A stretch of 64,000 nucleotides of DNA, taken from IMG/VR virus record IMGVR_UViG_3300032053_000002, positions 186,001-250,000 of that record; one strand, written 5' to 3'. Under the pieces are notes generated by a model. That model was not told the origin of the DNA. It saw only the letters and a program-made list of their open reading frames with translations, and made no database searches. This document shows, piece after piece, positions 800 to 64,000 of the stretch (position 1 is its first letter; every line of letters starts with the position of its first letter). Made by a program: the position numbers and the translations under genes.

Positions 800-2409
800 T
801 TTGTTTCCTCCCATTTAGTCGCGAATTCTTTTTGAAAATCCGATATTCCGAAAGATTCGGCGACAAATTTTATTTTATCATCCACTGGTTTTATTTCAAA
901 AATATCAAATCTTTTTCTCGATTTAAAATTTTCAAAAGTGATGTCTATAAAATCCATAAAATTCTTACCCATCATTTCAGACGTCATTCCACATTTAATT
1001 AAATATTCTCGCCCTTCCAATCCACGCTTATCTCTTTCCTCTTTGGGCACGTCATACCAGTATTTTATCGCAACCGCCGCATCGTACCAGTCGCATCTAT
1101 CGTCAAAAATGTATGGCGTTGGAGGCGACCCAACTAGTGCACGATTAGTCGGGAACAGTGGTCTTACCCAACTACCGTGTTTTTTATATTTTCCATCGTG
1201 ATTTGAACCCCATTCCGAATTGAAGTGCTTATCGGGATCGATGTATTCTCCGTTCTCATCGACAAATCCCATTTGATCCTGTAATCCTCCAGTAACCGTT
1301 GCTATAATAGGTTTCCCGACCATAAGAGATTCGCAAGTAGATAACCCGAAACCCTCGTTTGACGCCATGTTGATTGTCACATCGCAAACATTGTATAAAT
1401 AATTTAAGTATTTTGGCTCTAGCCTATCATTAGAAAAGATTAGATTTATATCAGGTGCAACTGCACGTTTAACCGCAATCAAATCCGTTCCATTTTCGTC
1501 TATTGGTTGAGTATGCATGACCAACGCAACTTTTTTTCGTTGTTCTTCGGTTAGCATATCAGTGAAGCATTTAAATGCTAAAATCACATCACCCGGCATT
1601 TTTCTGCGAATATTTCTATTATTGTAAAATACAATGAAATCAAAATCTCTTTCCTTAAAAATCTTTTTTCTGAAATCTCGTAATTCTTCGTATTCATTAG
1701 TGATTTTAACGGTTTCGGTTTTTTTATCTTTTATTTCGAAACTTTCTTCGGGAGATGATAAGCCGAGAGGTTTAAAGTTTATATGATCTACTCCGTGTGG
1801 TAAGTATCTTAGCGCCCAAGATTCAAGAGGCAATCTTTTTCTTGATTGTTTGACTATGTTGTATGTCTGTTTGCTAATACACCCAACACTGTCACATGAT
1901 TCATAATAATCCTGATTATACATTGGAATCGGAACATCGTCCCATATCGCGTAAAATGACAATGGTATGTATTGCCGTATTTCGTGTTCCATCTGATATA
2001 ACCAAATCCAGAATCTAGGGTCTGTAAAATGAATGATCGCATGGACTTTTTCTGCGTTAATCATGTAACGAACTAAATCCGGATCCCCGTATCCATCATA
2101 CGGATATATTCTCATATAATTTTCGCCAATTCCGAACAATCTGTCCATCTCTTTAGACATATCAACGATTTTACCTTTCTCCGGATGCTTAATCGCGCCT
2201 CCAACTTGCACCCAATTATATCGATGAATAGTTTTTAATACGATTTCTTTAGACATTGTTCCGACACCACTTGGAAGTCTTAAATCGTCGGATAATAAAA
2301 GAATTTTCTTTCGTATATTAAAAGGCAAAAATGTATCCCGTCTCCACTCTTCACTTGACTTAAGCACTAAATTTTTTCTGTATTCCTGTAAGTCAAAATT
2401 ATTTTCCAT
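796..2409 (-). CDS. Glycosyltransferase family 4 (GT-B)
   Basis: SDDLRLPSGVG N-terminal loop; NEGFGLSTCESLMVGKPIIAT (E-x7-E) motif; start MENN after GGAG. Confidence 0.9.
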   Translation of the reverse strand: MENNFDLQEYRKNLVLKSSEEWRRDTFLPFNIRKKILLLSDDLRLPSGVGTMSKEIVLKTIHRYNWVQVGGAIKHPEKGKIVDMSKEMDRLFGIGENYMRIYPYDGYGDPDLVRYMINAEKVHAIIHFTDPRFWIWLYQMEHEIRQYIPLSFYAIWDDVPIPMYNQDYYESCDSVGCISKQTYNIVKQSRKRLPLESWALRYLPHGVDHINFKPLGLSSPEESFEIKDKKTETVKITNEYEELRDFRKKIFKERDFDFIVFYNNRNIRRKMPGDVILAFKCFTDMLTEEQRKKVALVMHTQPIDENGTDLIAVKRAVAPDINLIFSNDRLEPKYLNYLYNVCDVTINMASNEGFGLSTCESLMVGKPIIATVTGGLQDQMGFVDENGEYIDPDKHFNSEWGSNHDGKYKKHGSWVRPLFPTNRALVGSPPTPYIFDDRCDWYDAAVAIKYWYDVPKEERDKRGLEGREYLIKCGMTSEMMGKNFMDFIDITFENFKSRKRFDIFEIKPVDDKIKFVAESFGISDFQKEFATKWEETK

Positions 2410-2428
2410 AGTTAATTTCTCCAATCAT

Positions 2429-2878
2429 TCATTCTAAATAAATTATATCTATGCCAACCTCGTTGAGCATTTCCCGTGAAACAATGTGGTTTTCTTTCCA
2501 ACGTTCTTCCTTCCAACGACCGTTTTCTTCTGGATTATAACAAACCAACATTGTTATTCCGGATTGTATTATAGCACGAGCACAATCAGCACAAGGAAAT
2601 CCATTGACATATAAAGTACATCCAAACAAACATACACCGGCTCTTGCGGCACTATATATTGCATTTCTTTCGGCGTGTTCGCTGTAAAAATATTTTATAG
2701 GTCGCTCGTGTCTTTTATCTATGTCGTCATTGCATCCACTTGGAAATCCATTATAACCAGTACTTAGAATTCTATGATTTTTATCGGTGATAATAGCCCC
2801 ATATTTAGTCGACCTATCTTTACTCCACAACGAAATATATTTCGCCAATTCAATAAATCTTTTATTCCAATCCATCAT
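2429..2878 (-). CDS. dCMP deaminase
   Basis: HAERNAI and PCADC zinc motifs, STGYNG. Confidence 0.92.
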   Translation of the reverse strand: MMDWNKRFIELAKYISLWSKDRSTKYGAIITDKNHRILSTGYNGFPSGCNDDIDKRHERPIKYFYSEHAERNAIYSAARAGVCLFGCTLYVNGFPCADCARAIIQSGITMLVCYNPEENGRWKEERWKENHIVSREMLNEVGIDIIYLE

Positions 2879-2888
2879 ATTGTCTTTC

Positions 2889-3428
2889 TTATTCCTCTGA
2901 AAAGTATTCGTTAAATTTATAAAATGCAACATACACCATCGGATCCACTGCGGCTGATATATCAGACGTCCAATAACAATGAGCCATAGCTTCTAACTTA
3001 GTTCCATCTCCAGTTGCTTCTTTCTTTTCTATTTTAGTCAATTCAACCGTAAACAAATAATATACCGTATCAACCGATTTTGTTCCGCGACTAATTCCCA
3101 GAAAAACCATATCTTGCGGCTCAACTTCATACCCGGCTTCTTCTTTTAGTTCTCTTACTGCATCTAGTATTTTACTAGTAGAATCCTTTTCAACTTCGCC
3201 AGTGATACTGCTTATACTTTCGTTCATGCCCCACGGTGGCGTGACTTCACTCCTAAGTAAAAATTCCAGCAAATTAGTTTCTGGATTATACCGATACGGA
3301 AGTATAGCAACAATTTGACCATCGCAACGATCTTCGTGCAAATAGTCATAACCATTTACACCATGTTCTGGGTCTATCATTTTGCGTAGGGAAACCCATT
3401 CGGTTTTACATAATATTTTTTCTTCCAT
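2889..3428 (-). CDS. NUDIX hydrolase
   Basis: GEVE-x-DAVRELKEEAGY Nudix box. Confidence 0.8.
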   Translation of the reverse strand: MEEKILCKTEWVSLRKMIDPEHGVNGYDYLHEDRCDGQIVAILPYRYNPETNLLEFLLRSEVTPPWGMNESISSITGEVEKDSTSKILDAVRELKEEAGYEVEPQDMVFLGISRGTKSVDTVYYLFTVELTKIEKKEATGDGTKLEAMAHCYWTSDISAAVDPMVYVAFYKFNEYFSEE

Positions 3429-3658
3429 TATTTCATACTCCCTGAAAAGATTACGTGTTCTAATATAAAGTTTGGATTAAAGCTGCTTGATAAAATAAGA
3501 TTTTCAAAATTTTCGTTATTGCTAAAAATAAATAATGCGGCTTCGACGAATTTATTAAAAGTTAACTGTCTTTCTACCGATTTATACTTAAACTTACGGT
3601 ATAATTCCGAATTTACCTTTACTGAAGTAATTTGTGTGTATTCTAATTTATTTTCCAT
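3428..3658 (-). CDS. Small possible ribbon-helix-helix DNA-binding protein
   Basis: Start MENKLE after AGGAG; TSVKVNSELYRKFK strand-helix pattern. Confidence 0.45.
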   Translation of the reverse strand: MENKLEYTQITSVKVNSELYRKFKYKSVERQLTFNKFVEAALFIFSNNENFENLILSSSFNPNFILEHVIFSGSMK

Positions 3659-3719
3659 AATGATTTTACTCCTAAAAAATATACATATACATATAAATAT
3701 ATGGAAATTAAAAAAAACC

Positions 3720-5375
3720 TTACTCAATTTCAAAAAATTTATTTTTTATTTCTTCTTTAACTCTTACAAAATCATCATTTTTACCGCGAAGCCACCAGGT
3801 TTTCCAATCATACTTTAGTCTCTCTGTCGCAATCTTGTAATACTCGGGGTCTATTTCAGAACCAATATACGGTCGGTCTAATATTTTACACGCGATTAAA
3901 GTTGTTCCGCTTCCGGTAAAGGGATCATAAACCGTTCCACCATCGGGAGTTGAAAACATTTTTACCAGATAATGCATGAGTTCTGTTGGCTTTACTGTCG
4001 GGTGGTTATTTTTAACTTTTGATATACGATTTAATCCAATATGATTTTGTAGGTATTCTGTTTTACCTTCTTTTTCTGCGTATTGCGCGCCACCACTTCT
4101 CGCCATCAATTTATCATCCAATTTTTCCAATCCCAAGTTTCTTTCAGAAGTGGACGCTTTTGCGGTATAAAAGAAGCGAGATGCTCCACCTTCATCTCCC
4201 AAACCACCCGCGTTATCACCAAGTTTTTTATTATATTTACCGTAAACCAAATCTCCCAGTGCTCCCATGCTTTTTTCTCCTCGTCCCCCAGAAGATTTAC
4301 TTATTCCGCTCTGTTCGTCCAATATCTTTACAGGGCAATCATCTGAACATTGCCAGTCTTCTACTTCTTCCATACCGTTTTCGTCGGCATATCCAATCGG
4401 AGTTCCCAACTCACTTTCGTCGCAACCAGAATATCCGCCGCTATATTGATGACCGTGTTTCCAGTTTCCGCTTTTCGTTCCTGTTATGGCTTTTATTTTT
4501 TTCTTTCCGACCAATTTACACTCTGGAGCGTGACTTAAAACCAGATTGGCGGGAAAACGACCTTTTTCAGAAGCAGATGCGATATCGTTTTTAGTGGGAT
4601 CGAAACCGCAATTTTCGCTAGAAAAAACGCCTTTTTGTCGCGGTTGGCAAGAAGTTGTTTTTGTTTCTTCGTTATGACTTATCCGACTACCATCTATATT
4701 TATTCCAGCGACACCGTGAGTAAGCGCATTATTTACAAAGTTTTTATCAGTTGGTTTCATTCCGATAATAATCGGCTCGTAAGCAGGCTTGAGAGCAGTT
4801 CCCCAACCGTTCCATTTTTTTGCTTCGTCGGTAGCAGGACGTGTTATATCAACCATTCCGTTTTTTAGATGCATTTCTGAAACAAAATCTATGCCACTTT
4901 TTTTATTAGCAGTTCTTCTCTTTTTTCCATCAATAAACGGATTCCTTTGTCCAACAACTTCTCTTTCCGCATTAGCATTTTTATCTATTCCCTTGCTTAT
5001 ATCAAAACTTTTCGGAAATCCGCTTCCGTAAAGCCAGCAAATAGTATCGCGTATTTCAAATCCAACATCTTCCATTGCGGATGCCAATCGGTGTGATGTT
5101 CTCGTTCCACCAAATGCAACAAGAAACCCGCCGGGCTTTAAAACACGATAGGCTTCTTTTACCCATTCTAAATGCCACTTATACATTTTTTGACCGTCAT
5201 TGTCGCCTTCGAGTTGTTTATGCTGCGAATCAAAAGCGGCATTCATGAAATTGAGGAGATATGGTGGATCGGTTATTATGAAGGGAATAGAATTTTCTTC
5301 CATTTTTTGCATTGTCAGCTTGCAGTCTTCGTTATATAGCATATTTTTACTCAAAAAACTTATTTTCCTTTTCAT
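3720..5375 (-). CDS. DNA N6-adenine/N4-cytosine methyltransferase (beta class)
   Basis: DPPY catalytic motif at the N-terminus; HPTVKP and DPFTGSGTT SAM-binding motif at the C-terminus. Confidence 0.9.
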   Translation of the reverse strand: MKRKISFLSKNMLYNEDCKLTMQKMEENSIPFIITDPPYLLNFMNAAFDSQHKQLEGDNDGQKMYKWHLEWVKEAYRVLKPGGFLVAFGGTRTSHRLASAMEDVGFEIRDTICWLYGSGFPKSFDISKGIDKNANAEREVVGQRNPFIDGKKRRTANKKSGIDFVSEMHLKNGMVDITRPATDEAKKWNGWGTALKPAYEPIIIGMKPTDKNFVNNALTHGVAGINIDGSRISHNEETKTTSCQPRQKGVFSSENCGFDPTKNDIASASEKGRFPANLVLSHAPECKLVGKKKIKAITGTKSGNWKHGHQYSGGYSGCDESELGTPIGYADENGMEEVEDWQCSDDCPVKILDEQSGISKSSGGRGEKSMGALGDLVYGKYNKKLGDNAGGLGDEGGASRFFYTAKASTSERNLGLEKLDDKLMARSGGAQYAEKEGKTEYLQNHIGLNRISKVKNNHPTVKPTELMHYLVKMFSTPDGGTVYDPFTGSGTTLIACKILDRPYIGSEIDPEYYKIATERLKYDWKTWWLRGKNDDFVRVKEEIKNKFFEIE

Positions 5376-6219
5376 TTTTTATTTTGTCGCCAGAAACCTC
5401 TAGCTCGCCCTCTTTGCGAAAAATCAGCAAATATTCGTGCACTTTTGAAGTATACCGTTTCGCCGCAACTTTCCCTATTTGATTTGAGGCGAAAGGCGAA
5501 ATGTTTTTAATGATAATCGTGTCCCAATGCAACAAACCTTCGGCGACAAACATCCTAATAATATCTGAATGAAACGAGCGAAACTTTCCATCACTTCTCC
5601 AATCTGCACAAACCCACGCAACGAACCCGCCCGGTTTTAATACTCTTTTTATATTTTTTCCAGTTACCGCCATTTCGGCTAAAAAGTCGCCATATTCTTT
5701 AATGTCGGACAGTTGTCCTTTTACGGATTCGTATTTTTCCAGATCGTGATATGGTGGGCAGGTCATAACTAAATGGGCAAAGTTATCAGGTGTTTCCCCC
5801 ATAAGGCAACCATTACTATTATAGATCGTCGCCTCGATTGAATGCGTCTCCAAATGTTTTTTCACCCGGCCAACCGTCGTTGGCGAGATTTCGTATCCGT
5901 AGTATTTTCTTCCCAACTTTGAGGCGACAAACGCTCTAGTCGCTCTTCCTGCAAACGGGTCTACTATTATTGAATCCACCATTGACCAGTATAAAACTAT
6001 ATTCTCGGCTAATCCGGCGTGAAACTCGCTGAACTCCAAACCCGGTAAATACTTTGCGTCTTCGGAGCGTTTTAACTCTTTTACGGCGTCGTCAAGGTAT
6101 GCGTCTTTCCATTTTGCTTTGGACTGTTTCTCAGGTTCTATTACCGACAAGGGAACAAATCCGAATTGCGAGTTTATCCGTCTTATATCTTCAAACGGAA
6201 GTATTTTTTCGTATCTCAT
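5347..6219 (-). CDS. Second amino-DNA methyltransferase
   Basis: DPFAGRAT motif I followed by TCPPY motif IV. Confidence 0.8.
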   Translation of the reverse strand: MRYEKILPFEDIRRINSQFGFVPLSVIEPEKQSKAKWKDAYLDDAVKELKRSEDAKYLPGLEFSEFHAGLAENIVLYWSMVDSIIVDPFAGRATRAFVASKLGRKYYGYEISPTTVGRVKKHLETHSIEATIYNSNGCLMGETPDNFAHLVMTCPPYHDLEKYESVKGQLSDIKEYGDFLAEMAVTGKNIKRVLKPGGFVAWVCADWRSDGKFRSFHSDIIRMFVAEGLLHWDTIIIKNISPFASNQIGKVAAKRYTSKVHEYLLIFRKEGELEVSGDKIKNEKENKFFE

Positions 6220-6662
6220 AAATAATAAACTCTCGCGTTATTTTTTACAAAAACACTTTCTATTATTTTACTAACGACATCCCAGTCGCCACCAGCAAGT
6301 CCGCAACCAATTTTAGGCATAGCAAATGATTTACTACGAAAAACAAATTCCGCGGCTTCCAATCCAGTACGGATTGCGTCGTAGTCGGTATAAACTCCGC
6401 CGTGACCGTATTTATACTGGGAATATAAGTTGATTACTATTATATCCTGATCATAATAATGATGTTTCCCGTACCAAAACGTAAAAGTTCCCAATTTGCC
6501 TTTGTCGCCTTTTTTTGTCAAGTCGTCTATGTTCCAGGCCTCAGGATATAATTTTTTCATAGTTTTGGCGACACCGGCTCCCCAGGTACAGAAACAGTTA
6601 CAGCCGTGCACGAGAATATCTTCTTTTGCTTTAAATAGATCGTCTTTGATTAGTTGTATCAT
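6216..6662 (-). CDS. Macro domain ADP-ribose hydrolase
   Basis: HGCNCFCTWGAGVA and AMPKIGCGLAGGDW motifs. Confidence 0.88.
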   Translation of the reverse strand: MIQLIKDDLFKAKEDILVHGCNCFCTWGAGVAKTMKKLYPEAWNIDDLTKKGDKGKLGTFTFWYGKHHYYDQDIIVINLYSQYKYGHGGVYTDYDAIRTGLEAAEFVFRSKSFAMPKIGCGLAGGDWDVVSKIIESVFVKNNARVYYL

Positions 6663-14965: not shown

Positions 14966-15721
14966 TTAATTGGAAAAGTCAGTATCAGCTTCAACAATAT
15001 AATACTTGGCGGTATAATTGTCGCCTTCGAAGGCGACAAACCCTAATCCTTCAGAACTAATCTTAAAAACCGCTTTTTTAGCACCTTTGTTAGCGGAAAA
15101 AATTTCTTTAATATAATCCGCGTTATATGATATTGTTTTGTCTACTGAATTTATTTCATTGACTTTGACATCCAAAAATGCTCGATTGGTATTTATCGAT
15201 GAATATCCCAATACGAGTTTATATTCCCCGTCTCGATTTTTCAAAAGCGTCGCGATCTTGGTTTCGGAAAAAACACCTTTTACTTTAATGTAGTCGTTCA
15301 TAAACTCTTTCGTTAAACCGATTTCCAAATCATATGGCGGTTCATCCTTTAACCCCTTTGGTTTTGGAATAACCAATAAATCAGACAACATATAATTTAA
15401 TTGCTGTTTTTTATCTCTCATTTGCACAGACACGTATTTTTCTTCTCCACTCTCATTAATATTTTGCAAATCGAGTTCGAATTCGTCGTCCATCAAAGAC
15501 AAAAATTTTGAAAGTAGGCCGGAATTCAATATTCCTATTTTAGTATCTATCCCAGTAAATCCGGCCTTATTCACGACAACTTCTCCCATGAGAGATTTAT
15601 CTTCAGTAATTATTTTCGTGCTCAACGTGTCTTCTGAAATATCCCACGCAGCTGCCTCAACCGTTCCGCTTAGATAATATTTTTCAATAAAATCAAGCAA
15701 ATATGACTTCTTCATTTTCAT
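14966..15721 (-). CDS. gp45: Sliding clamp (gp45/PCNA-like)
   Basis: Size, beta-rich acidic pattern, position between polymerase and clamp loader. Confidence 0.78.
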   Translation of the reverse strand: MKMKKSYLLDFIEKYYLSGTVEAAAWDISEDTLSTKIITEDKSLMGEVVVNKAGFTGIDTKIGILNSGLLSKFLSLMDDEFELDLQNINESGEEKYVSVQMRDKKQQLNYMLSDLLVIPKPKGLKDEPPYDLEIGLTKEFMNDYIKVKGVFSETKIATLLKNRDGEYKLVLGYSSINTNRAFLDVKVNEINSVDKTISYNADYIKEIFSANKGAKKAVFKISSEGLGFVAFEGDNYTAKYYIVEADTDFSN

Positions 15722-19130: not shown

Positions 19131-20657
19131 TTACTCCGTTTCAAACATATTTTTCTTAGATATTTTTATAAACTTCGGATCTTTTTTTGCTTCGCTACAA
19201 AACTTTTTGTTTTTCCATTCTGGGTCGTCTAATAATTTTTGTACTTCTTCTTTCCTATCATCTCGAATTTCCAAACGAGTGTCCGAATCAAATGGGTCGT
19301 CAACCGCACCCATCATTATAACCCATCTCCTCAGATGCTCCCACGAATTAGACAAGTGAAGGTCTCGATGTGTATTATAGAGAATATTTCTCTTATATCC
19401 GTTTCCGTTTATAATATGTTGTAACCATTCTCTTCCGTATAATCGTTGCCCACCGTCACTGTACTCGCGATCATCACCCAGACTATGCGGTTCTTTTTTT
19501 CTTGCATCTTCATAATTTTTTATACACTCCGTCATCGAAGAAAGTAAATTATTTTTAAACACTTCTTCGTGCGATGGTGAAGGTAATTTCCATTTATTTT
19601 TATCGGGCGACATTTCGAGTAATGATAAAAAATCACTTTTCGTTTTAAAGTACTGAGTATAATTGTCGCCCAAAACGTATTTCATAATTGGATGCTCATA
19701 AACCAATGACCTCGCGCCCAATTCTATTCCGTCCTGAACCGACAAGTTCCATGTAGCATAATCGTCCACAAATGTCAATGTCGCAAAACAATTTTCTATC
19801 AAATACCGATATTCTCCACGGCTTGGAAGCGATTCTACCCTCATCCAGTTCGGAGCGGCTTCACCGGCAGTTGGGTGTAGAGCATTTTTATCCGTTACCC
19901 AAATCAGATATTCGTCCCTGGATAAATCTTTCGTGTATTCTATTAAACGTTTAATTCCCGTGGAATTATTCCAGCGGTGATTGAAAACTAAGATATTTTT
20001 CTTTGGTAACGAAATTGGTTTGGATGGCGGGAACGGGTCTGGCGACAGAGGCATATAAGTGATTTTCTTTTTTATTTCAGTGTCGATTATCTCTCCGGCA
20101 ATTCTCGATCTTTTCCAGTTGTCTTTTAAATAATTTATGGAAACATCACTGTGTATAAATGTCTTCGCAGATAAATCTATCGCTTCAATCTGTCGCCAAA
20201 ATCCATCCGTATATGTTTCGGACGGCTTTGACTTTGGGGAGTCTATCCAGTGAAAAAACAGAAATGTATCTACTGATGTTCCATATCTTCTCGATAACAT
20301 CCCGCTCATAATATTATAAAATAGTTCTGGTTGATGTAGAAAAATAAAATCAATGTCGTATCTTCGCCAGTCGAAAAAACTGGCCAGCGCGGAATATTCA
20401 AAATATCCCCGATTCGCTAAAACCGAAATCGGGTATGGAAAAGGCACCCACGTAACATTTTTCCTAATGTAGTCGCCTCCAATTTCGTTTAATTCAGGAA
20501 CCAGAATAAAATGGTGGCAATCAGGTAAGAAGTTTACGGTTTTCCATAAAACTTTGAAATTGGAATCCGCGTGATGTTGCCAGACGTTTCCACTCCATCT
20601 AACAGGCGACATACAATGTAAAACTCTTCTACCGTATAATATACTTTTTTTATCCAT
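19131..20657 (-). CDS. GT-B glycosyltransferase, paralog 2
   Basis: ILVFNHRWNNSTG; full-length similarity to 11096..12532. Confidence 0.65.
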   Translation of the reverse strand: MDKKSILYGRRVLHCMSPVRWSGNVWQHHADSNFKVLWKTVNFLPDCHHFILVPELNEIGGDYIRKNVTWVPFPYPISVLANRGYFEYSALASFFDWRRYDIDFIFLHQPELFYNIMSGMLSRRYGTSVDTFLFFHWIDSPKSKPSETYTDGFWRQIEAIDLSAKTFIHSDVSINYLKDNWKRSRIAGEIIDTEIKKKITYMPLSPDPFPPSKPISLPKKNILVFNHRWNNSTGIKRLIEYTKDLSRDEYLIWVTDKNALHPTAGEAAPNWMRVESLPSRGEYRYLIENCFATLTFVDDYATWNLSVQDGIELGARSLVYEHPIMKYVLGDNYTQYFKTKSDFLSLLEMSPDKNKWKLPSPSHEEVFKNNLLSSMTECIKNYEDARKKEPHSLGDDREYSDGGQRLYGREWLQHIINGNGYKRNILYNTHRDLHLSNSWEHLRRWVIMMGAVDDPFDSDTRLEIRDDRKEEVQKLLDDPEWKNKKFCSEAKKDPKFIKISKKNMFETE

Positions 20658-20660
20658 AAA

Positions 20661-21662
20661 TTATATTTCCTTGTATAAATTTTGTATCCAATTTTCTGCG
20701 AAAAACTTCTCTAAAATGTTTTGTTGCTTTAAAACTATTTCATTCTTTTTATCAGTATTCGCCGTATAATAATTTATTTTTTCTATTAAGTCGCCCATCG
20801 AATCGTATCGTAACTCGTCAATAACATATTCTTTATATGCGGTTGTATTATTATTAGGCACGAAATAACAGAGACCACTCACCATACCCTCAATTACCGC
20901 ATATCCGAAATTATCATAATCCGATAAAGATAATCCGAATCCGCAAGTATAAAGAAATTGCTTGTACTGACCATCACTTATTTCTGGATTATACCTAACA
21001 TCAAACTCCTCTTTAAATTTTTCCGGAAATGAAGAGAACGGTTGAAATGGGCAAGTAATCACCATTCTATTTTTTATTTCTTTTGGTAACTCAAATAATT
21101 TTTGCGGATTCTTTTCTTTAACAAGACGATGATTAAATAAAATGATATTAGAATTCCTCGGACTTAATTTTTTTTCAAAAATTGGTAAACCCATTGCGAT
21201 TGTTTCATATGGTAATAAATCGGAAAACCATTTCGTCGCAACAAAAACTTTTGTCGCCAATTCAGCGACAACTTTTTCATATTCCCTCAATTTTTTAGAA
21301 TTTCCCGGTTCGTATTTTGAAAAATTGGAACCGTGAACTATACCGTATATTTGTTCAGCAAACCCCGCTTTAATTATGTCGGGAGTAAAATCTTCTATCA
21401 AATTAGCGAAAAATACTTTCTTAATTTCCCTATCTCTCATTTCTTTAATAATTGTCGCCAAAAGTTTATGCTGTTCCGTTCTCCCTGGTAAATACGTATC
21501 TTCTCTAAACGGGGATGGCGACACAAATACTTTTGATAAAAATACGTTTAAATCACGAGACCACTTTACGTTGTAAAGATGCGGAACGAAAATAATATCT
21601 TTCCGTTTATACTTTTCCGCAAAAGAAAATTGGTCATCTTCTGATTCGAATGTTTTACTCAT
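20661..21662 (-). CDS. GT-B glycosyltransferase, divergent paralog 3
   Basis: IILFNHRL motif and DNFGYAVIEGM (E-x7-E-like) motif. Confidence 0.62.
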   Translation of the reverse strand: MSKTFESEDDQFSFAEKYKRKDIIFVPHLYNVKWSRDLNVFLSKVFVSPSPFREDTYLPGRTEQHKLLATIIKEMRDREIKKVFFANLIEDFTPDIIKAGFAEQIYGIVHGSNFSKYEPGNSKKLREYEKVVAELATKVFVATKWFSDLLPYETIAMGLPIFEKKLSPRNSNIILFNHRLVKEKNPQKLFELPKEIKNRMVITCPFQPFSSFPEKFKEEFDVRYNPEISDGQYKQFLYTCGFGLSLSDYDNFGYAVIEGMVSGLCYFVPNNNTTAYKEYVIDELRYDSMGDLIEKINYYTANTDKKNEIVLKQQNILEKFFAENWIQNLYKEI

Positions 21663-35389: not shown

Positions 35390-36130
35390 TTATTTTTCAT
35401 TCAATTTATATCTAATTTTTATTTTTGTTGTATATGGGTCAACACACCACGGGTCTCCGAACATTACTCCGAGTTTCTGCCTAAGTTGATTTGTCAGAAC
35501 AACGCATATCTTTTGTTTTCCGATTAGACGAGTTATTTTGCGAAGTGCTCTAGAAATGATAATCGCTTTATCGGTATTCCAACCTTCTTTAGAATAGTCG
35601 CCTTCGAGTTCTCCAGTAGTCGTCGCTGCGGCGACCGAATCCACAACAATCGTTACTAATTTATCTTTGTGCGCTTCACGAACTTCATTTATTATTTTAT
35701 CTATTGCGGAAAAAATTTGTTCGACCGTATCAAGTTGAGTATAGACCATTTTACTTATATCTATTCCGATTGCTCGTAAGAAATCCATACTCAATGCATT
35801 TTCAGTATCAATATAAACCGCAACGCCGTCTCTCTTTTGAGTATTCGCCAAAATGTGGGCGGCCAATAACGATTTTCCTGATGCTTCCAATCCATTTATT
35901 TCTATGATTCGCCCAACCGGAATACCACCGTGCGGACGATTAGAAATCGCCAAGTCCAGCATCGTACTTCCAGTAGAAATCCAATCGTCAACATCCGTAG
36001 GAGTTTCTTCTTCACCTATAAAATATGCCACTTTTCCTATGTCTTTAAATTCTTTATTTAAGTTCTCCGCCAACGAATGCGCTAAATCATTTTTGTCCGT
36101 TTTATTCTTTTCACTTTTATTTGTCGCCAT
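35390..36130 (-). CDS. uvsX: RecA/UvsX N-terminal half ending in an 18-aa N-intein
   Basis: GLEASGKS Walker A, YIDTE, VVDSVAA, TNQLR..GVMFGDPW|CVDPYTTKIKIRYKLNEK*. Confidence 0.92.
   Translation of the reverse strand: MATNKSEKNKTDKNDLAHSLAENLNKEFKDIGKVAYFIGEEETPTDVDDWISTGSTMLDLAISNRPHGGIPVGRIIEINGLEASGKSLLAAHILANTQKRDGVAVYIDTENALSMDFLRAIGIDISKMVYTQLDTVEQIFSAIDKIINEVREAHKDKLVTIVVDSVAAATTTGELEGDYSKEGWNTDKAIIISRALRKITRLIGKQKICVVLTNQLRQKLGVMFGDPWCVDPYTTKIKIRYKLNEK
35393..35446 (-). mobile_element. Split intein, N-part (18 aa)
   Basis: Block A-like CVDPYTTKI starting with Cys1. Confidence 0.82.
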
Positions 36131-36205: not shown

Positions 36206-37057
36206 TTATTTCTCGTTAAAAACCGCATTAAACGCATCTTGTAATTCACCGGCATCTAGTGGTTTCGTAGATGGTTTCGGTGGTTTAGGCGGAGCGGGTT
36301 TTTTTGGAGCTTCTTCTTCTTCGACGACGCTGTCTGGGTCTGGAACTTCTTCTTCGTCTTCCGAATAACTGACAGCTTCCTTACCTTCTGGCGCATCTTC
36401 CGGATTCAGGTGTTTTTTGAGTATACTCGTCAACTCTTCATAGCTTTTTTCTTCGTACAATTCGGAAATGTCAATCTGAGAATCAACGATGATTTTCATA
36501 ATTTCCTTATCGTCCGTAATAGGCGTTTGGTTTACCCGAATACGCATATTTGTTTTCGGATAATCTTGACCTTCGGCTTTTTTGGAGCTGACAATTATAT
36601 CTCTACCGGATACTACGTCAGTAATATCACCGTATTCAGGATCGGCGATATGTGCTAACAGTTCTTCGTATACCGTTTTACCGAATCCCCAGAACTTAAC
36701 TCCCTCTTGTTCTTTTTTACGAATAATAATCGGAACAAAAGTTCTCAGTTTAGGTTCTAACTTTTTACCCATCTTCCAGTTTTCCTTGTCGCCAGAAGTT
36801 TTCAACTTTTGTGCGAATTCCATTATCGGGTCAGGACGACCAAATGAAACGGGCGACAAAAGTGTTTTACCGGCGAGTTCATAATGGAAATACAGTTCGA
36901 TAAAAGGATTTTCGCGATTGAATTTGTACGGCACAATTCGTATAACCTGTTCTTGTACTGTAGGCTTCCAAATCATATCAGATTTACGATTTGTTTTCTT
37001 TAAAGCGTCCAGACGTTGCTTGATTGCATCGATGTTGATGCCTTTTTGAGGTGACAT
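36206..37057 (-). CDS. Single-stranded DNA-binding protein (gp32-like)
   Basis: WKP..RIVP, FWGFGKTVY, YGDITD..GRD, acidic/Pro-rich tail; start MSPQ after AAGGAG. Confidence 0.82.
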   Translation of the reverse strand: MSPQKGINIDAIKQRLDALKKTNRKSDMIWKPTVQEQVIRIVPYKFNRENPFIELYFHYELAGKTLLSPVSFGRPDPIMEFAQKLKTSGDKENWKMGKKLEPKLRTFVPIIIRKKEQEGVKFWGFGKTVYEELLAHIADPEYGDITDVVSGRDIIVSSKKAEGQDYPKTNMRIRVNQTPITDDKEIMKIIVDSQIDISELYEEKSYEELTSILKKHLNPEDAPEGKEAVSYSEDEEEVPDPDSVVEEEEAPKKPAPPKPPKPSTKPLDAGELQDAFNAVFNEK

Positions 37058-55068: not shown

Positions 55069-55376
55069 CGATCTACATTTTTTGGAATATCGTCGCCTAT
55101 TAAAAACCGGTATGTAAAATTGGAATTTATTACGTCATAAAACAAAAGTCTGGCCATTGTCCATTCCGAGTTATCATACATACGCATTTCACCGGTAGAT
55201 GTAATACTTTTTTTAATCCCGTGTTTTTTCATAACAGAATAAAACTTTTTTCGTAATGTCGCCAGAGAATCATCGTCCTTGATATTCATTTTAATAATAT
55301 CTTTGGCGACATTTTTCATAAAGTCGTGTTTTTGCGTAGATAAACTATTCCAGGCCGCAAGTTTTGGCGTTTTCAT
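55065..55376 (-). CDS. Hypothetical protein
   Basis: Convergent TTAA stop overlap with kamA. Confidence 0.5.
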   Translation of the reverse strand: MKTPKLAAWNSLSTQKHDFMKNVAKDIIKMNIKDDDSLATLRKKFYSVMKKHGIKKSITSTGEMRMYDNSEWTMARLLFYDVINSNFTYRFLIGDDIPKNVDR

Positions 55377-56719: not shown

Positions 56720-57361
56720 TTATCGTTTTCTCGATACCGATGACCTTCCTGAAGACCGATGGGATTGTGATACACTTTGTTTGCTTGTGTTGCCAGTGGG
56801 TCGCGTATGAACTTTCGGAGTGTTATTTTCAACCCTTTGTCTACTTAATGGTTTGAATTCGGAACGTGAACGGGTAGGCTCCTTTCTCTTAATCGTTCCA
56901 CGAGTATTTTGTTTAGCGACTCTATTTCCATTTAATTCGCGAGTATTGTTATAGATTCGTTCTCTTTTAATAGGTTGTCGCCTAATTTGTTGCGCCGTAT
57001 TGGATATCTGAGTTCGGTGAGTATTCATCGGGCGACGATCATAAAAAGAGTAATGATGGTTAGCAGCTAAATAGTGTGGGCGACTATGATAATAATGGTC
57101 GTGGTAATAATAGTAATCGGGATAATAATATGGATAATAGTAATAATAATCAGGCCAGTAATAATACGAATAATAATATGGATAATAATAGTACGGAGCC
57201 CATCCCCAATAAAGTTCTAAATAAACTCGGGAATAACTTTCCGTGTCAACGCAGGTTACACTATCACTGTATACATCGTTGTCAGTCTGGGCGACAACCC
57301 ACGGTGTGCAAGACGACAAAAGTAAACCTAACATCAATACAAATAATAATTTAATTTTCAT
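56720..57361 (-). CDS. Lipoprotein with a Tyr-rich tract and an Arg/Ser-rich disordered tail
   Basis: LLLSSC lipobox; YYYYP/DYYYY repeats. Confidence 0.7.
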   Translation of the reverse strand: MKIKLLFVLMLGLLLSSCTPWVVAQTDNDVYSDSVTCVDTESYSRVYLELYWGWAPYYYYPYYYSYYYWPDYYYYYPYYYPDYYYYHDHYYHSRPHYLAANHHYSFYDRRPMNTHRTQISNTAQQIRRQPIKRERIYNNTRELNGNRVAKQNTRGTIKRKEPTRSRSEFKPLSRQRVENNTPKVHTRPTGNTSKQSVSQSHRSSGRSSVSRKR

Positions 57362-58661: not shown

Positions 58662-60491
58662 TTACCTGCTATATATCAACTCATATTTTAGGTTTCCGCA
58701 ATCCCAAACTCTATCGTATTCGTTTAGTTGCATATTTTGCCATTCGGTAAGGTTAGGATCGTATTTTTTTAATTTCTTATGTAAGACTTTTTTCCTAAAA
58801 TTAAAACGATGTATTCTACTACTGCCGTTCATATTAAAATACCAATAACTAGGAGATGTTTCTGATACTTTTGTAAATCCCATCTTATTGTATAGATTGC
58901 TGCCGGATTTTGTCCAACGGCGATCGGCGAAACTTATTATTTTTTCTGGAGAATATTCGCGCACAAAAAAATTGAGTAATTTACTAGCTAATCCATTTGA
59001 CCGGACAGATGTTGCAAATCTCATCAATTCATATTCTCCTTTATTTTTTCCAGACCCAACAGACCTTTTTGATTTTCCAAAAGTCATCACGGCAACCAAC
59101 TCATTATCATAAAATGCACCTAATTTTATTTTGGTATTGTCACTTCCTTGTATGTGATTTTCGTTTAGGAATTTGTTTTTTGATGCGTTGTCTATTTCTT
59201 TTATATCACAATTTCTAGCATAAACTTTTCTGGTTTCATCGGACAATATGTATTCTAATCTGTTTTTTACTATATTTTGTTTTTCTATCCATTCATCTTC
59301 AAATATCTGAATTAAATGAATTCCCTTGCTCTCGGCTAATGAAGTCTTACTTAGATGATATTTTTTATCTTTGTTTCCATTTATTTCGGAATGCCAAAAT
59401 ATACCATTATATTCTATACCAATTTTTTTATCTGGAATGTAAAAATCTAGCTCCTTCCCGTTCAATGTTTTTCTATCATTTCTTATTATTTCGCCAGAAT
59501 ATATTTTCTTCAAGAAGTTATTTATTTCGTCTTCGGCTTTAGAAACACCGCTCCACAATAACGGATAACACGTTAAACATCTTGGAATGCGCCCATTTTC
59601 CAAGCTGCCAAAAAATATATTATTGCACTTTTTACAACGAAATTCATATTTTTTATTTTTAACTCCCTGATAATCATTTAAGGTAAATAACACTTCAACG
59701 TATTCGCGTATTTTAGGTGAGCTTAAAAAATTATTATACACCGTTTCAAATAATGATTTTTTAATCTGCGCCATTCCTTCTTCGGTTTGAGTAAAAGAAT
59801 TTGCACCGTATTTCTCTTGGTTGGTTTTCTTTATTTTTGCAACCATCATTTGTTTAATCATTGGGTCGTTAGCTTTCAACGATTGTAGTTTACTGGTTTT
59901 ATTAGATGTGGTTTTTTTTATTCCATATTTAACAATGTAATCCAATGGCAAGATATTATGTTTTTTTAGATGAGTATTGCTCAATTTAAAAAAATGTTCT
60001 TGACAAATTTCGCATTTAATTCTATTATCTGGAATTAGTAGTTTATCTTTTCTATCCTTTTTTATATGATATAATTTCCAGAGATATTTATATCGCGGGT
60101 ATTTATTCAGAAAGTCGTCTACGTTTATGTTGTGAATACTTTTTAGATGCGCAGTAAACACGCCAGATTTATTCTGTGTATCAGAAGTTTTCCATTCTTG
60201 GCACATTGGGCAGGAAAAACTTTCTTTTTTAATCGCGTTCTTTATTATGAAATTTTCTATGAAAAACGGAGAATTGTGCAAAGATGTTGAATGTGTAGTC
60301 AATGCTCCAGATAAATTATTTATATCAATACTTTCCCAATCGCATAATTTACATTTTATTATTTTTGAATTATCGTTGATTTTCCTCTTTACTGTTCGTT
60401 GTTTATTATATTCTTTGTCGGAAAACTTGCATTCATTTGAACAGTATATTCTTTTTTTGAAAATTTCTTTTTTACATATCTTACACTTCAT
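58662..60491 (-). mobile_element. Hef-like endonuclease: Zn fingers + Vsr-like nuclease + Mom/GNAT-like C-terminal domain
   Basis: ELDFY..IEYNGIFWHS..IFEDEW; ARNC..FL.ENHIQG..ELMRFA..ASKLL..SFADRRW; start MKCK after AAGGAG. Confidence 0.72.
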
Positions 60492-60573
60492 TTTCACTCC
60501 TTTAGTAGTTATTTTGACCTTATATGTATAGATATGAAATAAAATAAAAAAAGTTCCATTTTTTGTAAAATAA

Positions 60574-60599
60574 AAAACCCGCTCCGAAGAGCGGGTTTT
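60574..60599 (-). terminator. Intrinsic terminator after the major capsid gene (UUCG loop)
   Basis: AAAACCCGCTC-CGAA-GAGCGGGTTTT. Confidence 0.88.
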
Positions 60600-60636
60600 C
60601 ATTAGATTTTATAGTTTAACTGTTAAGTGTCAGAAA

Positions 60637-62268
60637 TTAGACGGTTTCCAACCCATGAACTACTATTTTTCCGTAAAATTCCGGACGCACGATTTTCTTT
60701 GCGTATCGCGTCATAACCCCGCGTCTTGGCGTGAAGTTATCCGGGTCGTATACAAGAGGAGTCATGATTAATGGAATGTATGGAGCATAAACAGCGCCAG
60801 TTTCCAAGAAACTAGTTCCTCTGAATCCGACTAGAATTACGTTTTCAACCATATAAGGATTCTTATATACTGTAAAACGTGAATTCAACATACCGACTTT
60901 TTGAACGCCCATCGCGAACGACATGGCGGTTCCATCAGTATCAGCCGCATATCCAGGAATAGATTCAATAATCGTAGCAATATCCGGTGATAAAACTATG
61001 AAGTTTGCACCACCGCGAAGAGTCAATTGATGAATCTTGTTGGATACTTTTTGAATCTTGTTGCCAAGAGTTTGATACCATTCGTTCTTTGTACCAGTGT
61101 GAGAAGTTGCATCATAGAACGACGCTTTATCGGAAGAGATTTCCCACCCAGGAATGGCTGACCAGTATTCTTTAGTAACGGCATTCACCATTAACATATC
61201 AAGAATTTCGAGGTCAATTTCCATACCAATATATTCGCTTAACAGAGCGGTAAGCTCGGCTTCAGCGTCTATTGAATGGTATGCATTCAAGTCTTGGGCA
61301 AGTTCAGGAGTCCATACGGCTTTCATCTTACGAGTTTTCGAGACGATGGATTCTTGAGCGACCGATAGGTCAATTTCAGGAATGTCAAGTTTTAATGCAC
61401 TACCGGATTCAGACGTATCTTCGAAATCACCGCGAGCAGTAGCCGTTGGTTGTTTATGATAACGAATTACATACGAACTTCCAGAAAAATCAGTTAATTT
61501 GGCACTACCAGAAACAACCCACATAATATTTGCACCGACAATTTTGGTAAATTGTGGCAAATAAGAATGAATACTACTACCAGAAACGGAAAATGCGCGA
61601 ACGCCTTCCAAATCCAGATCGGATAATGAACCGGTGTTATAGAAGATTTTTACTAGCTGGCCCGCAGAAAGTGAAGCTGAAACTAATCCGGTTGTAAAAT
61701 CAATATCAGCGTATGCACACGCAGCAGATGCAAATGTATTTGTGGCAGCCGTTGCGCCCCAAATAGGTATACCACCAACACTAGTATCATTGACGGAATA
61801 ACCGAATTTTCCAGCGCCATAGAGACCGCCGACCGTATCATCAGTTGTTCCCGGGGTTTTTCCAACACCTGAACCACCATATACGGATTTGTTCTGGGTA
61901 AACCCAGGTTGATGACCGCTTCCATATTTAAAATCGATATAGAATACGAGTCCAGAAGGAAGATTCATCGGCTGAATAGAAACGAATTCCTTAGCAGCCA
62001 CTTCGCCGAAAATACGGCGAACCAATGGAAGAGCGACACCAGACCATTGTTCAGCACCACCCCCGCCGGTTTGCGATACTTCATGCAATACCTGACGAGC
62101 TTGGTTTTCCAAAAGGATTGCCATTCCGTATACTTCATGTTCTTTTTCCAGACCATCAAGTAAACCGGTTGGCTCCCATTTCTTTACTAAACCACGAGTC
62201 TGCTCAATAAGAGCGTCGTAAGGGTTTTTCCCTTCCATTAACTTTTTTAAGTTGAGCAATGTACTCAT
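60637..62268 (-). CDS. gp23: Major capsid protein (T4 gp23-like)
   Basis: SIQPMNLPSGLVF, KTRKMKAVWTPELAQDLNAYH, YAPYIPL, GVMTRYA. Confidence 0.96.
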   Translation of the reverse strand: MSTLLNLKKLMEGKNPYDALIEQTRGLVKKWEPTGLLDGLEKEHEVYGMAILLENQARQVLHEVSQTGGGGAEQWSGVALPLVRRIFGEVAAKEFVSIQPMNLPSGLVFYIDFKYGSGHQPGFTQNKSVYGGSGVGKTPGTTDDTVGGLYGAGKFGYSVNDTSVGGIPIWGATAATNTFASAACAYADIDFTTGLVSASLSAGQLVKIFYNTGSLSDLDLEGVRAFSVSGSSIHSYLPQFTKIVGANIMWVVSGSAKLTDFSGSSYVIRYHKQPTATARGDFEDTSESGSALKLDIPEIDLSVAQESIVSKTRKMKAVWTPELAQDLNAYHSIDAEAELTALLSEYIGMEIDLEILDMLMVNAVTKEYWSAIPGWEISSDKASFYDATSHTGTKNEWYQTLGNKIQKVSNKIHQLTLRGGANFIVLSPDIATIIESIPGYAADTDGTAMSFAMGVQKVGMLNSRFTVYKNPYMVENVILVGFRGTSFLETGAVYAPYIPLIMTPLVYDPDNFTPRRGVMTRYAKKIVRPEFYGKIVVHGLETV

Positions 62269-63466: not shown

Positions 63467-63488
63467 TACGGTTCTCCTAATACATTTA

Positions 63489-63604
63489 TCCAATATTATT
63501 GGTTTGGATTTTAACACTATTGATGAGTGTTAATGAATTACTAACATCATTTATTTCGGTACACTATATCGTAGATAGTGTATTCGGTAGGTTAAATATA
63601 AATA
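63489..63604 (-). promoter_or_regulatory. TATTTATA motif plus a structured leader with twin hairpins
   Basis: Motif at 63597-63604; 8-bp stems with 7-nt loops at 63511-63533 and 63560-63582. Confidence 0.55.
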
Positions 63605-63651
63605 TATGTAAAAAATAAAAACATATTAAAAATGATATATTTTCTTCATAC

Positions 63652-63879
63652 TTATTGGTTTCGCCTCATTTCACTTCGCATCCTCGCTTTCGCGCGATTG
63701 CGTTTTTCGCGTTTTATAGCAGATGGTTTACGAAAATTTGATTTTTCCTGTATATGGAGCATCAACTCTTCTTTTTTAATCATTTGTTTTAATTTTTTCA
63801 GTGCTCCATCAATATTTTTGTCACGTACAGTTACTTGTAATCCAGTAAACCTTGATAAAACTTCTTCATTTGGGATCAT
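63652..63879 (-). CDS. rpsU: Ribosomal protein bS21 homolog
   Basis: VTVRDKNIDGALKKLK..FRKPSAIKREK; adjacent to head genes. Confidence 0.88.
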   Translation of the reverse strand: MIPNEEVLSRFTGLQVTVRDKNIDGALKKLKQMIKKEELMLHIQEKSNFRKPSAIKREKRNRAKARMRSEMRRNQ

Positions 63880-63891
63880 ATTCCCTCCTAT

Positions 63892-64000
63892 TTATTTCAC
63901 TTGATTATATTTTCTTTCTTCTACACTGTCGCCAAGAACATAGGTATTAAAAAGAACTTCTAATTTTCTACCTTTGTCGCCTTTAATCATTTTTAACTGG
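63892..64000 (-). CDS. C-terminal fragment of an upstream gene
   Basis: Open frame QLKMIKGDKGRKLEVLFNTYVLGDSVEERKYNQVK*. Confidence 0.5.
   Translation of the reverse strand, partial: QLKMIKGDKGRKLEVLFNTYVLGDSVEERKYNQVK

What the first reader, a model, noticed from the sequence alone, without database searches (positions are those of the whole stretch)
859..63981. Highly iterated non-palindromic hexamer GGCGAC/GTCGCC across the window
Seen: a manual scan finds about 80 copies (about 37 GGCGAC and 45 GTCGCC on the + strand; the count may be off by a few), roughly one per 800 bp, about half extended as GGCGACA. A zero-order estimate at ~32% GC gives only about 4-6. Copies occur in both orientations within same-strand genes and in different frames (GGC GAC Gly-Asp, GTC GCC Val-Ala, ATG GCG ACA, TCG CC), and in translation-initiation regions (57362, 58598), so a single codon pair does not explain them. 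I found none in the five homing-endonuclease genes (~4.7 kb), consistent with those being recent arrivals. Established: cyanobacterial HIP1 and Dcm/Vsr-shaped motifs show that methyltransferase-linked repair can iterate a word genome-wide; Chi sites are strand-polarised. Inference: this is the target of a phage or host modification, recombination or replication system. Candidates in the window are the two amino-MTases, the glycosyltransferases and the Vsr-like nucleases.
Basis: partly seen in the sequence, partly recalled or inferred. Interest (0 to 1): 0.88.

Follow-up and report, generated by a model that had tools for sequence, protein, structure and literature searches.

The report
Iterated GGCGAC word in jumbo phage
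A 293-kb T4-like phage from a metagenome carries the six-letter word GGCGAC about once per 750 bases on both strands, far more often than protein coding or base composition allows, often as back-to-back pairs, which points to an unidentified DNA-reading system that counts on many copies.

Summary
The window has 38 GGCGAC and 50 GTCGCC, 88 copies in all. Expected counts are 6.5 (zero order), 11 (order-2 Markov), 15.6±3.5 (synonymous-codon shuffle) and 27.9±4.0 under a shuffle that keeps protein sequence, codon usage and every dinucleotide (z=13.8). It is the top hexamer under the first three; only four words were run under the strictest.

The word is enriched in all six frame/orientation classes, with no strand polarity and little flanking information. 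GGCGAA is a weaker second form. The dipeptides that encode the word are themselves enriched.

The excess holds over 117 kb of the same contig and in close relatives (capsid 73-79% identical). It is absent from more distant relatives and from cultured relatives. Site positions turn over.

One new feature: within 150 nt, copies prefer the divergent arrangement 5'-GTCGCC…GGCGAC-3' over the convergent one (hexamer 25:2). Protein sequence does not explain this.

So this is a selected, strand-symmetric signal at the DNA level. Its reader is unknown. My best guess, at about 0.3, is a Chi-like signal for end-processing nucleases. Rivals are the target of the two adjacent amino-methyltransferases, a primase or initiation word, and a repair drive. 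A Vsr-type route is disfavoured.

The parts
859..63981 (.). 88 dispersed copies of GGCGAC/GTCGCC (38 + 50), mean spacing 725 nt, with a weak preference for A at +1
5202..6572 (.). Densest cluster: 9 copies in 1.4 kb over the second methyltransferase gene and the macro-domain gene. The relative L160 has 6 copies in the matching 1.4 kb
6504..6572 (.). Divergent pair GTCGCC-N57-GGCGAC, conserved in position in relatives L160/L161. It encodes G-V-A … G-D of the macro domain
15018..15039 (.). Divergent pair with a 6-nt spacer, forming a perfect 22-nt palindrome inside a gene
21454..21522 (.). Divergent pair, start-to-start distance 63
24526..24569 (.). Divergent pair, start-to-start distance 38
35597..35635 (.). 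Divergent pair, start-to-start distance 33
36788..36857 (.). Divergent pair, start-to-start distance 64
39578..39602 (.). Divergent pair, start-to-start distance 19
55258..55310 (.). Divergent pair, start-to-start distance 47
56977..57036 (.). Divergent pair, start-to-start distance 54
19606..19670 (.). The only convergent pair (GGCGAC…GTCGCC) within 100 nt in the window
3720..5375 (-). Beta-class amino-methyltransferase (PF01555). The DPPY part is at aa 13-122 and the AdoMet part at aa 449-521, separated by a 338-aa insert with no Pfam match. Best solved relatives are DpnA and CcrM. Candidate writer, not shown
5347..6219 (-). Second amino-methyltransferase (PF01555). Its solved relatives are mostly N4-cytosine enzymes. 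Candidate writer for the A-less strand, not shown
33552..33944 (-). Small ORF with a weak hit to the Vsr-like restriction-endonuclease fold (PF18741, E=7e-6, below the family cut-off)
60637..62268 (-). Major capsid gene (Gp23 family). It has no copies, against 5.3 expected at the genome's enrichment factor (P=0.005)
58662..60602 (-). Homing-endonuclease-family gene with no copies. It is one of five such genes (also 18295-18879, 26041-26955, 34856-35287, 51780-52661)

Best explanation
Shown: GGCGA(C>A) is a short asymmetric word kept at high copy number by selection on the DNA itself, in one lineage of T4-like jumbo phages. It is enriched equally in both orientations, in every reading frame and in non-coding DNA. 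Synonymous codons and even dipeptide choice are bent towards it. Its density is kept while individual positions turn over. At distances up to about 150 nt, copies prefer the divergent arrangement 5'-GTCGCC…GGCGAC-3'. Inferred, and my committed guess: it works like a Chi site. A helicase-nuclease that enters at DNA ends (the host's AddAB/RecBCD type, or a phage enzyme) reads 5'-GGCGAC-3' on the 3'-ended strand, stops degrading it and hands the tail to the phage RecA/UvsX-type recombinase. Each extra copy then shortens the stretch lost from any end of the linear, concatemeric, recombination-replicated genome. That would explain selection for number rather than place, and for both orientations. 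With that polarity, a divergent pair makes the word-terminated 3' tail fold into a terminal hairpin. This would account for both the polarity and the distance limit of the pairing, but it is speculation.
For: The DNA-level, selected nature of the word rests on (nulls and all six frames; 34 of 77 Gly-Asp dipeptides are GGC-GAC against 3.7 expected; GTC-GCC 18 against 2.0). One search shows the motif-encoding dipeptides at 284 against 222±14, while the reversed dipeptides are not enriched. There is no strand polarity: 38:50 in the window and 60:80 over 117 kb. The trait is confined to one lineage, with turnover of positions. Divergent pairs: 12:1 within 100 nt in the window plus 14.5 kb of flanks; replication in data not used for discovery gave 20:9 and 22:9 with the pentamer core; the excess is confined to 150 nt or less; GGCGA and GGCGAC rank 1 and 2 of 463 words for this asymmetry; pairs that are possible at the amino-acid level show no bias, 36:41. 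For the Chi-like reading, the word has the shape of known Chi sites: 5-8 nt, asymmetric, G-rich and species-specific (PMC4614115 abstract, listed). Chi is over-represented in phages that lack RecBCD inhibitors, most strongly in the virulent T5-like and the P1-like phages that package concatemers (PMC3784561). The Chi of the Bacteroides AddAB enzyme was unknown in 2010 (PMC2887965). The window encodes a RecA-type recombinase, gp32, a Cas4/AddB-type PD-(D/E)XK nuclease and a DprA-like protein.
Against: No host is known. The only host lead is a KamA-type gene 68-72% identical to homologues in Calditrichia and KSB1 genomes. It points to genomes where GGCGAC is not a top word (Calditrichia loci 22 against 14.9 expected), although E. 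coli Chi itself is only about 2.3x enriched. Spacing is Poisson-like or slightly clumped (CV 1.19), not even. A plain Chi model does not predict paired sites, so the hairpin idea is ad hoc. T4-type phages usually protect their ends in other ways (own knowledge). An 8-fold excess and 1.2-1.4 copies per kb exceed known Chi figures (0.2 per kb in phages). If the DNA is heavily glycosylated, as the sugar gene cluster suggests, a host enzyme might not read it.
Confidence: 0.3

Rival explanations
1. The word is the target of the phage's own pair of adjacent amino-methyltransferases. One enzyme would write m6A on GGCGAC and the other m4C on GTCGCC, which has no A. The copies would then be a dense epigenetic self-mark, used for example for strand discrimination, replication or packaging control, or accumulated by a motif-directed repair drive as proposed for HIP1.
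For: There are two adjacent PF01555 genes. One has solved relatives among adenine enzymes (DpnA, CcrM) and the other among N4-cytosine enzymes. The word has A on one strand only, so full modification needs two enzymes (read directly from the sequence). Homologues of the first enzyme at 56-59% identity sit in contigs that also carry the excess (L160/L082 15 against 1.1; L161 8 against 0.4), whereas a 45% homologue sits in a contig without it. The densest cluster of sites lies on these genes, in the window and in L160.
Against: Specificity cannot be read from sequence. Phages often carry several methylases aimed at host restriction sites (own knowledge). Under restriction-modification logic, a genome should lose rather than gain targets of this kind. 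No known orphan methylase target is enriched 8-fold in its own phage (own knowledge). The co-occurrence with homologues may simply reflect relatedness.
Confidence: 0.22
2. The word is a preferred start or loading site for the phage replication machinery. It could be a primase template word (5'-GTCGCC-3' would give a five-base primer beginning pppGC plus one cryptic base, as in T4-type primases) or an initiator-binding word. Divergent pairs would then give outward-pointing starts.
For: Density per orientation is one copy per 1.3-1.7 kb, in the range of T4 Okazaki fragments (fragment size from own knowledge). Both orientations are used and there is no link to genes or frames. The polarity of the pairs and their limit of about 150 nt fit a local unwound bubble.
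Against: Known primases need only three bases, and no enrichment of their sites has been reported (own knowledge). Spacing is not more even than random. No primase gene was identified in the 117 kb that was read. About 75-85% of copies are unpaired, depending on the distance cut-off.
Confidence: 0.17
3. The excess is a mutational or repair drive without any function for the copies: very-short-patch-type correction (Vsr-like nuclease plus methylase) or another biased conversion turns near-matches into matches.
For: One-step synonymous neighbours are depleted about 3-fold, while two-step neighbours are near expectation. A weak Vsr-fold ORF is present.
Against: Depletion is the same for neighbours that differ by T, A or G (GGT/GGA/GGG-GAC 2/6.7, 3/10.8, 0/4.0). 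The deamination products of the other strand are not depleted (GGCAAC 1.29, GACGAC 1.09, AGCGAC 1.37). No C5 methylase was found in the window ORFs scanned (most of those over 100 aa) or in the Pfam gene tables of the flanks read. Dcm/Vsr gives only small effects in E. coli (own knowledge). A drive of this kind does not explain the pair polarity.
Confidence: 0.08
4. The excess is an artefact of composition, codon usage, CpG excess or a repeated protein motif.
For: CpG-containing tetramers are enriched about 1.4x in general, and the order-4 Markov expectation is 64.
Against: Every null fails: z=19 for the synonymous shuffle and z=13.8 for the shuffle that also keeps dinucleotides. All six frames and the non-coding DNA are affected. 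There is no flanking conservation.
Confidence: 0.02

Closest known systems
Chi sites (crossover hotspot instigators) of RecBCD/AddAB, including their over-representation in some phage genomes
   Same: Short, asymmetric, G-rich and species- or lineage-specific. Over-represented inside genes without regard to frame. What matters is number, not place. There is a precedent in virulent and temperate phages (PMC3784561).
   Different: Density and excess are several times higher. There is no strand polarity. No host genome is known to share the word. Divergent pairing has not been described for Chi.
HIP1 (GCGATCGC), the highly iterated palindrome of cyanobacteria and some cyanophages
   Same: A word iterated across the genome in all frames, with turnover of positions and a suspected link to methyltransferases.
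   Different: HIP1 is a palindrome, and this word is not. The HIP1-like arrangement of the half-words (GGCGA followed by TCGCC) is the disfavoured one here, and GCGATCGC occurs once. The excess is tens of times smaller.
DNA uptake sequences (USS of Pasteurellaceae, DUS of Neisseria)
   Same: About one copy per kb, both orientations, inside genes with a preference for cheap frames, effects on peptide composition, and frequent inverted pairs.
   Different: Those are 9-12 nt words in competent bacteria, driven by uptake bias, and their inverted pairs act as terminators between genes. Here the genome is a phage, the pairs lie inside genes, and they are followed by A, not T.
Targets of single-strand-modifying systems (Type III Mod, MmeI-family Type IIL such as TCCRAC and ATCGAC, BREX PglX)
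   Same: A six-base asymmetric word with the only adenine at position 5 and none on the other strand (own knowledge of those motifs).
   Different: Those targets are avoided or neutral in phage genomes, not enriched. The methylases here belong to the beta class (PF01555), not the gamma-class enzymes of the MmeI and BREX families.
Stoperators of cluster A mycobacteriophages
   Same: Many dispersed copies of one asymmetric site inside genes of a phage genome, read by a phage protein.
   Different: Stoperators are 13 nt, number 20-35 per genome and are oriented with transcription. Here the word is a hexamer at about 1.2 per kb in both orientations.

Membership tests
Chi site | Short asymmetric word over-represented in the genome that uses it | tested here: met
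   88 copies against 6.5-28 expected under five nulls
Chi site | Recognised by the host RecBCD/AddAB enzyme and over-represented or skewed in the host chromosome | tested here: inconclusive
   The host is unknown. In the loci of the nearest cellular KamA homologues the word is not a top word (Calditrichia 22 against 14.9). The test has too little power.
Chi site | Orientation-dependent action, usually seen as strand polarity | tested here: not met
   38:50 in the window and 60:80 over 117 kb, with no switch along the contig. A circularly permuted phage would not need polarity.
Chi site | Attenuates nuclease activity and stimulates recombination | not testable with these tools
   This needs biochemistry or genetics.
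HIP1-type iterated palindrome | Palindromic word | tested here: not met
   GGCGAC is not a palindrome. GCGATCGC occurs once and GGCGATCGCC not at all.
HIP1-type iterated palindrome | Iteration in all frames with turnover of positions | tested here: met
Dcm/Vsr-shaped word | C5 methylase plus Vsr endonuclease present | tested here: not met
   No PF00145 hit in the window ORFs scanned (most of those over 100 aa) or in the Pfam gene tables of the flanks read. There is only a sub-threshold PF18741 hit. About 176 kb of the contig remains unread.
Dcm/Vsr-shaped word | Specific depletion of the T-containing deamination neighbours | tested here: not met
   Transition and transversion neighbours are equally depleted at synonymous sites, and the other-strand products are not depleted.
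Target of an asymmetric-site methyltransferase pair | Two methylases able to modify the two different strands | tested here: met
   Adjacent PF01555 genes with adenine-type and N4-cytosine-type relatives
Target of an asymmetric-site methyltransferase pair | The word is actually methylated | not testable with these tools
   This needs SMRT or nanopore kinetics, or expression of the enzymes.
DNA uptake sequence | Word of 9-12 nt in a naturally competent bacterium, with inverted pairs acting as terminators | tested here: not met
   This is a phage genome and a 6-nt word. The pairs lie inside genes and are followed by A.
Primase recognition word | Even coverage of both template strands at Okazaki-fragment scale | tested here: inconclusive
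   The density fits (one copy per 1.3-1.7 kb per orientation), but the spacing is Poisson-like or clumped (CV 1.19).

The most novel reading that the evidence does not exclude
A genome-wide cis-signal not described before in a lineage of jumbo T4-like phages: an asymmetric hexamer selected for copy number on both strands and preferentially laid out as divergent pairs up to 150 nt apart. It would be read directionally by machinery specific to the phage lineage, such as its own Chi-like, priming or initiation signal, possibly written by a two-enzyme m6A/m4C module, rather than borrowed from the host.
Probability: 0.35. Interest if true: 0.8.

Novelty: new variant of a known kind. Interest (0 to 1): 0.66.

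Why it matters
Iterated words such as Chi, HIP1 and uptake sequences are rare windows onto machinery that reads whole genomes. Here a six-base word has reshaped codon choice: 44% of all Gly-Asp pairs use it. It has also shifted dipeptide content, in an uncultured 293-kb phage and its close relatives. It carries a directional pair architecture that none of the known classes predicts. If it is a Chi-type word, it would give the first Chi candidate for a host group where none is known and would help to name the host. If it is read by the phage, it would be a new kind of phage self-signal. Either way the word is a cheap marker for this phage clade in metagenomes, and the question can be tested directly with modification calling and two methylase clones.

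Tried and rejected
1. I first thought that distant relatives carry other iterated words (AGGCGG, CCACCGCC and others). They turned out to be one-stranded and to extend to 9-mers, so they are repeated coding units and not the same phenomenon.

2. Cultured relatives (Microcystis phage Mel-JY01, Flavobacterium phage immuto, the uncultured LR756508) have no comparable word, and the top words of Mel-JY01 and immuto show no pair bias.

3. The host-signature test used the single genome scan, with the KamA-type gene as query. The best hits are Calditrichia and KSB1 at 68-72% identity, and the word shows no clear excess there. The test is inconclusive, not negative.

4. Linking the methylase to the word through homologues in viral and metagenome contigs showed co-occurrence only among close relatives.

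L198, a phage with several methylases, has a modest excess (10 against 1.7, including the two ascertained copies). L224 is one gene of a Mu-like prophage with a local cluster and unenriched flanks. This was a dead end.

6. A hairpin-stability explanation of the pair polarity was rejected, because both arrangements have identical nearest-neighbour stacks (reasoning, not a tool result).

7. A protein-level explanation of the pair polarity was rejected.

8. A PolB query found no relatives, because a single-protein query reaches only close ones.

9. Literature searches for the word as a methylation motif found nothing useful.

10. tRNA search: none in the window.


Full report
**What the window is.** The window is positions 186001-250000 of the metagenome contig Ga0315284_10000017 (IMGVR_UViG_3300032053_000002, 292,723 bp), in the same orientation. 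It belongs to a T4-like jumbo phage. The window encodes a Gp23-family capsid protein, PolB, a clamp loader, a DnaB-type helicase, gp32, a RecA-type recombinase, ribonucleotide reductase and a baseplate protein, nearly all on the minus strand. The terminase and a portal with inteins lie just downstream on the contig.

No record in the phage collection is close at the DNA level. The nearest cultured relatives are Microcystis phage Mel-JY01 (capsid 53%, PolB 44%) and the Flavobacterium immuto phages (capsid 53%).

| Null model | Expected | Observed |
|---|---|---|
| Zero order | 6.5 | 88 |
| Markov order 2 | 11.1 | 88 |
| Markov order 3 | 30.7 | 88 |
| Synonymous codons shuffled within each gene | 15.6±3.5 | 83 in CDS |
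| Protein sequence, per-gene codon usage and every dinucleotide kept | 27.9±4.0 (max 38 of 300; z=13.8) | 83 in CDS |

- The word ranks first of all hexamers at orders 0, 2 and 3 and under the codon shuffle.
- The order-4 expectation of 64 mostly reflects the hexamer's own contribution to its two pentamers. Without the hexamer copies, the pentamers are 1.5-1.7x enriched, little above the general 1.4x excess of CpG tetramers.
- Flanking positions carry almost no information apart from A at +1, so this is a hexamer and not a piece of a longer repeat.

**Anatomy.**
- All six frame/orientation classes are enriched: sense 34/4.4, 3/0.7 and 13/4.9; antisense 18/2.7, 2/0.6 and 13/2.8.
- Of 77 Gly-Asp dipeptides, 34 are written GGC-GAC against 3.7 expected. 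Val-Ala is written GTC-GCC 18 times against 2.0.
- Five copies lie in the 4.7% of the window that is non-coding or at gene boundaries.
- GGCGAA is a weaker second form, enriched 1.9-4.7x in all six classes. GGCGAT is depleted.
- The four dipeptides that can carry the word (GD, VA, AT, SP) total 284 against 222±14, while their reversals are not enriched. The pressure therefore reaches protein sequence.
- There is no strand polarity: 38:50 in the window and 60:80 over 117 kb.
- Spacing is roughly Poisson (CV 1.19), with one dense cluster of 9 copies in 1.4 kb over the second methylase gene and the macro-domain gene.
- The capsid gene has none where 5.3 would be expected (P=0.005). The five homing-endonuclease genes also have none, but only 2.7 are expected there (P=0.067).

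- In the window plus 14.5 kb of flanks, the arrangement 5'-GTCGCC…GGCGAC-3' occurs 12 times within 100 nt and the convergent arrangement once. About 3.5 of each would be expected (my estimate from site density).
- Five relatives give 4:0. Shuffling orientation labels gives p<0.0002.
- With the pentamer core within 150 nt, the ratio is 51:23 in that stretch.
- In data not used for discovery, the ratio is 20:9 in 38 kb of newly read contig and 22:9 in relatives.
- The excess stops at about 150 nt and shows no preferred spacer length.
- GGCGA and GGCGAC rank first and second of 463 words for this asymmetry.
- Pairs that are possible at the amino-acid level show no bias (36:41), so the bias lies in codon choice.
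- Both arrangements would give hairpins with identical stacks (reasoning). The polarity therefore calls for a directional reader or process.
- About a quarter of copies have a divergent partner within 100 nt, against 6-8% at random positions.

**Distribution among relatives.**
- The excess holds over 117 kb of the contig: 140 copies, with the newly read regions at 12 against 2.4 and 22 against 2.5.
- It holds in contigs whose capsid is 73-79% identical (L003, L005/6, L007, weakly in L002) and in contigs with a 56-59% identical methylase (L082/L160, L161).
- It is absent in L004, in the relatives at 57% capsid identity or less, and in the cultured relatives.
- Positions turn over. In divergent orthologues, 1 of 20 site positions summed over three pairwise comparisons is shared (about 15 distinct positions). 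In the better-conserved macro-domain gene, 2 of 4 positions are shared, both at conserved G-V-A and G-D residues.

**What it is.** The evidence fits a signal selected at the level of duplex DNA: symmetric use of both strands, saturation of cheap synonymous opportunities, depletion of one-step synonymous neighbours with two-step neighbours near expectation, and density kept while positions move. A drive specific to T:G mismatches of the Vsr type is disfavoured:
- Neighbours that differ by T, A or G are equally depleted.
- The deamination products of the opposite strand are not depleted.
- No C5 methylase was found in the window ORFs scanned (most of those over 100 aa) or in the Pfam gene tables of the flanks read. 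The only Vsr-like hit is sub-threshold.

**How it may work.** No reader was identified, so every mechanism below is inference.
- *Chi-like signal (about 0.3, my preferred reading).* It gives a natural reason for selecting copy number in both orientations, and it has a precedent in phages (PMC3784561). If the G-rich strand is read on the 3'-ended strand, a divergent pair would make the protected tail end in a hairpin, which would fit the polarity and the distance limit. Against it: no host is known to share the word, the one host lead gives no clear excess, and density and excess are above known Chi values.
- *Target of the two adjacent beta-class amino-methyltransferases (0.22).* One resembles adenine enzymes and the other N4-cytosine enzymes. 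This would suit a word that has adenine on one strand only. It does not explain why the targets should accumulate.
- *Primase or initiation word (0.17).* It fits the density per strand and the outward-pointing pairs, but not the uneven spacing.
- *Repair drive (0.08) and artefact (0.02).* These complete the list.

**Comparison and novelty.** The word belongs to the known kind 'iterated genomic word', with Chi, HIP1 and uptake sequences as the other examples. It fails defining features of each: it is not a palindrome, it has no polarity, no competent host is involved, and no host counterpart has been shown. Its divergent-pair architecture is not part of any of them. I rate it a new variant of a known kind, with moderate to high interest. 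The mechanism is open and can be tested directly.

Noticed in passing
window 33963-36130 (-): The RecA/UvsX-type gene is split. The N-terminal part is at 35390-36130 and the C-terminal part at 33963-34853, with a 24% G+C ORF (34856-35287) between them. This looks like a homing-endonuclease or intron-type insertion.
   Followed up: partly
window 3720-5375 (-): The first methyltransferase carries a 338-aa insert (aa 111-448) between its catalytic and AdoMet-binding parts, with no Pfam match. It may be an unusually large target-recognition domain or an inserted element.
   Followed up: partly
contig 160761-186000, upstream of the window (L299, L301): A large nucleotide-sugar gene cluster: about eight genes with epimerase/dehydratase-family Pfam hits, a DegT aminotransferase, a B12-radical SAM enzyme and methyltransferases. 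With it come several glycosyltransferases, dCMP deaminase, dUTPase and NUDIX. This suggests elaborate glycosylation, possibly of the DNA. The 160.8-170.8 kb stretch has only 2 copies of the word.
   Followed up: partly
contig about 260.8-264.8 kb, downstream of the window (L298 3152-7174): The portal gene encodes 1340 aa, with two intein-splicing hits interrupting the Portal_T4 domain.
   Followed up: no
window 53782-55068 (+): A KamA-family radical SAM aminomutase lies on the opposite strand to nearly all other genes. It is 68-72% identical to homologues in Calditrichia/Caldithrix and KSB1 genomes. This suggests recent exchange with that bacterial group and is the only lead to the host.
   Followed up: partly
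window 60637-62268 (-): The major capsid gene (42.8% G+C) has no copy of the word, although 5.3 are expected at the genome's enrichment factor (P=0.005). Relatives have one each. Translational selection on a highly expressed gene may override the motif pressure.
   Followed up: partly
whole window: CpG is in general excess (2769 observed against about 1900 expected). CpG tetramers such as GCGA, CCGA and ACCG are about 1.4x enriched over the codon-shuffle expectation. Candidate host-lineage genomes also favour words of the TCGA type (CATCGA, ATCGAC).
   Followed up: partly
window 22867-23250 (-); L298 18121-18348: A small protein with an RF-1 domain (of the peptidyl-tRNA hydrolase/ArfB type) and a weak ribosomal protein S21 homologue are encoded. 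Mel-JY01 also encodes S21.
   Followed up: no
window 6216-9120 (-): A group of possible counter-defence genes lies next to the methylases: a macro domain, a weak Lar-like restriction-alleviation hit, a PLOD-type glycosyltransferase and a SLOG/DprA-like protein.
   Followed up: no
L089 (Mel-JY01 20000-69999): Mel-JY01 has its own moderately enriched two-orientation hexamers (TCTACA 63 against 21; CCGAGG 19 against 3.4), without pair polarity.
   Followed up: partly
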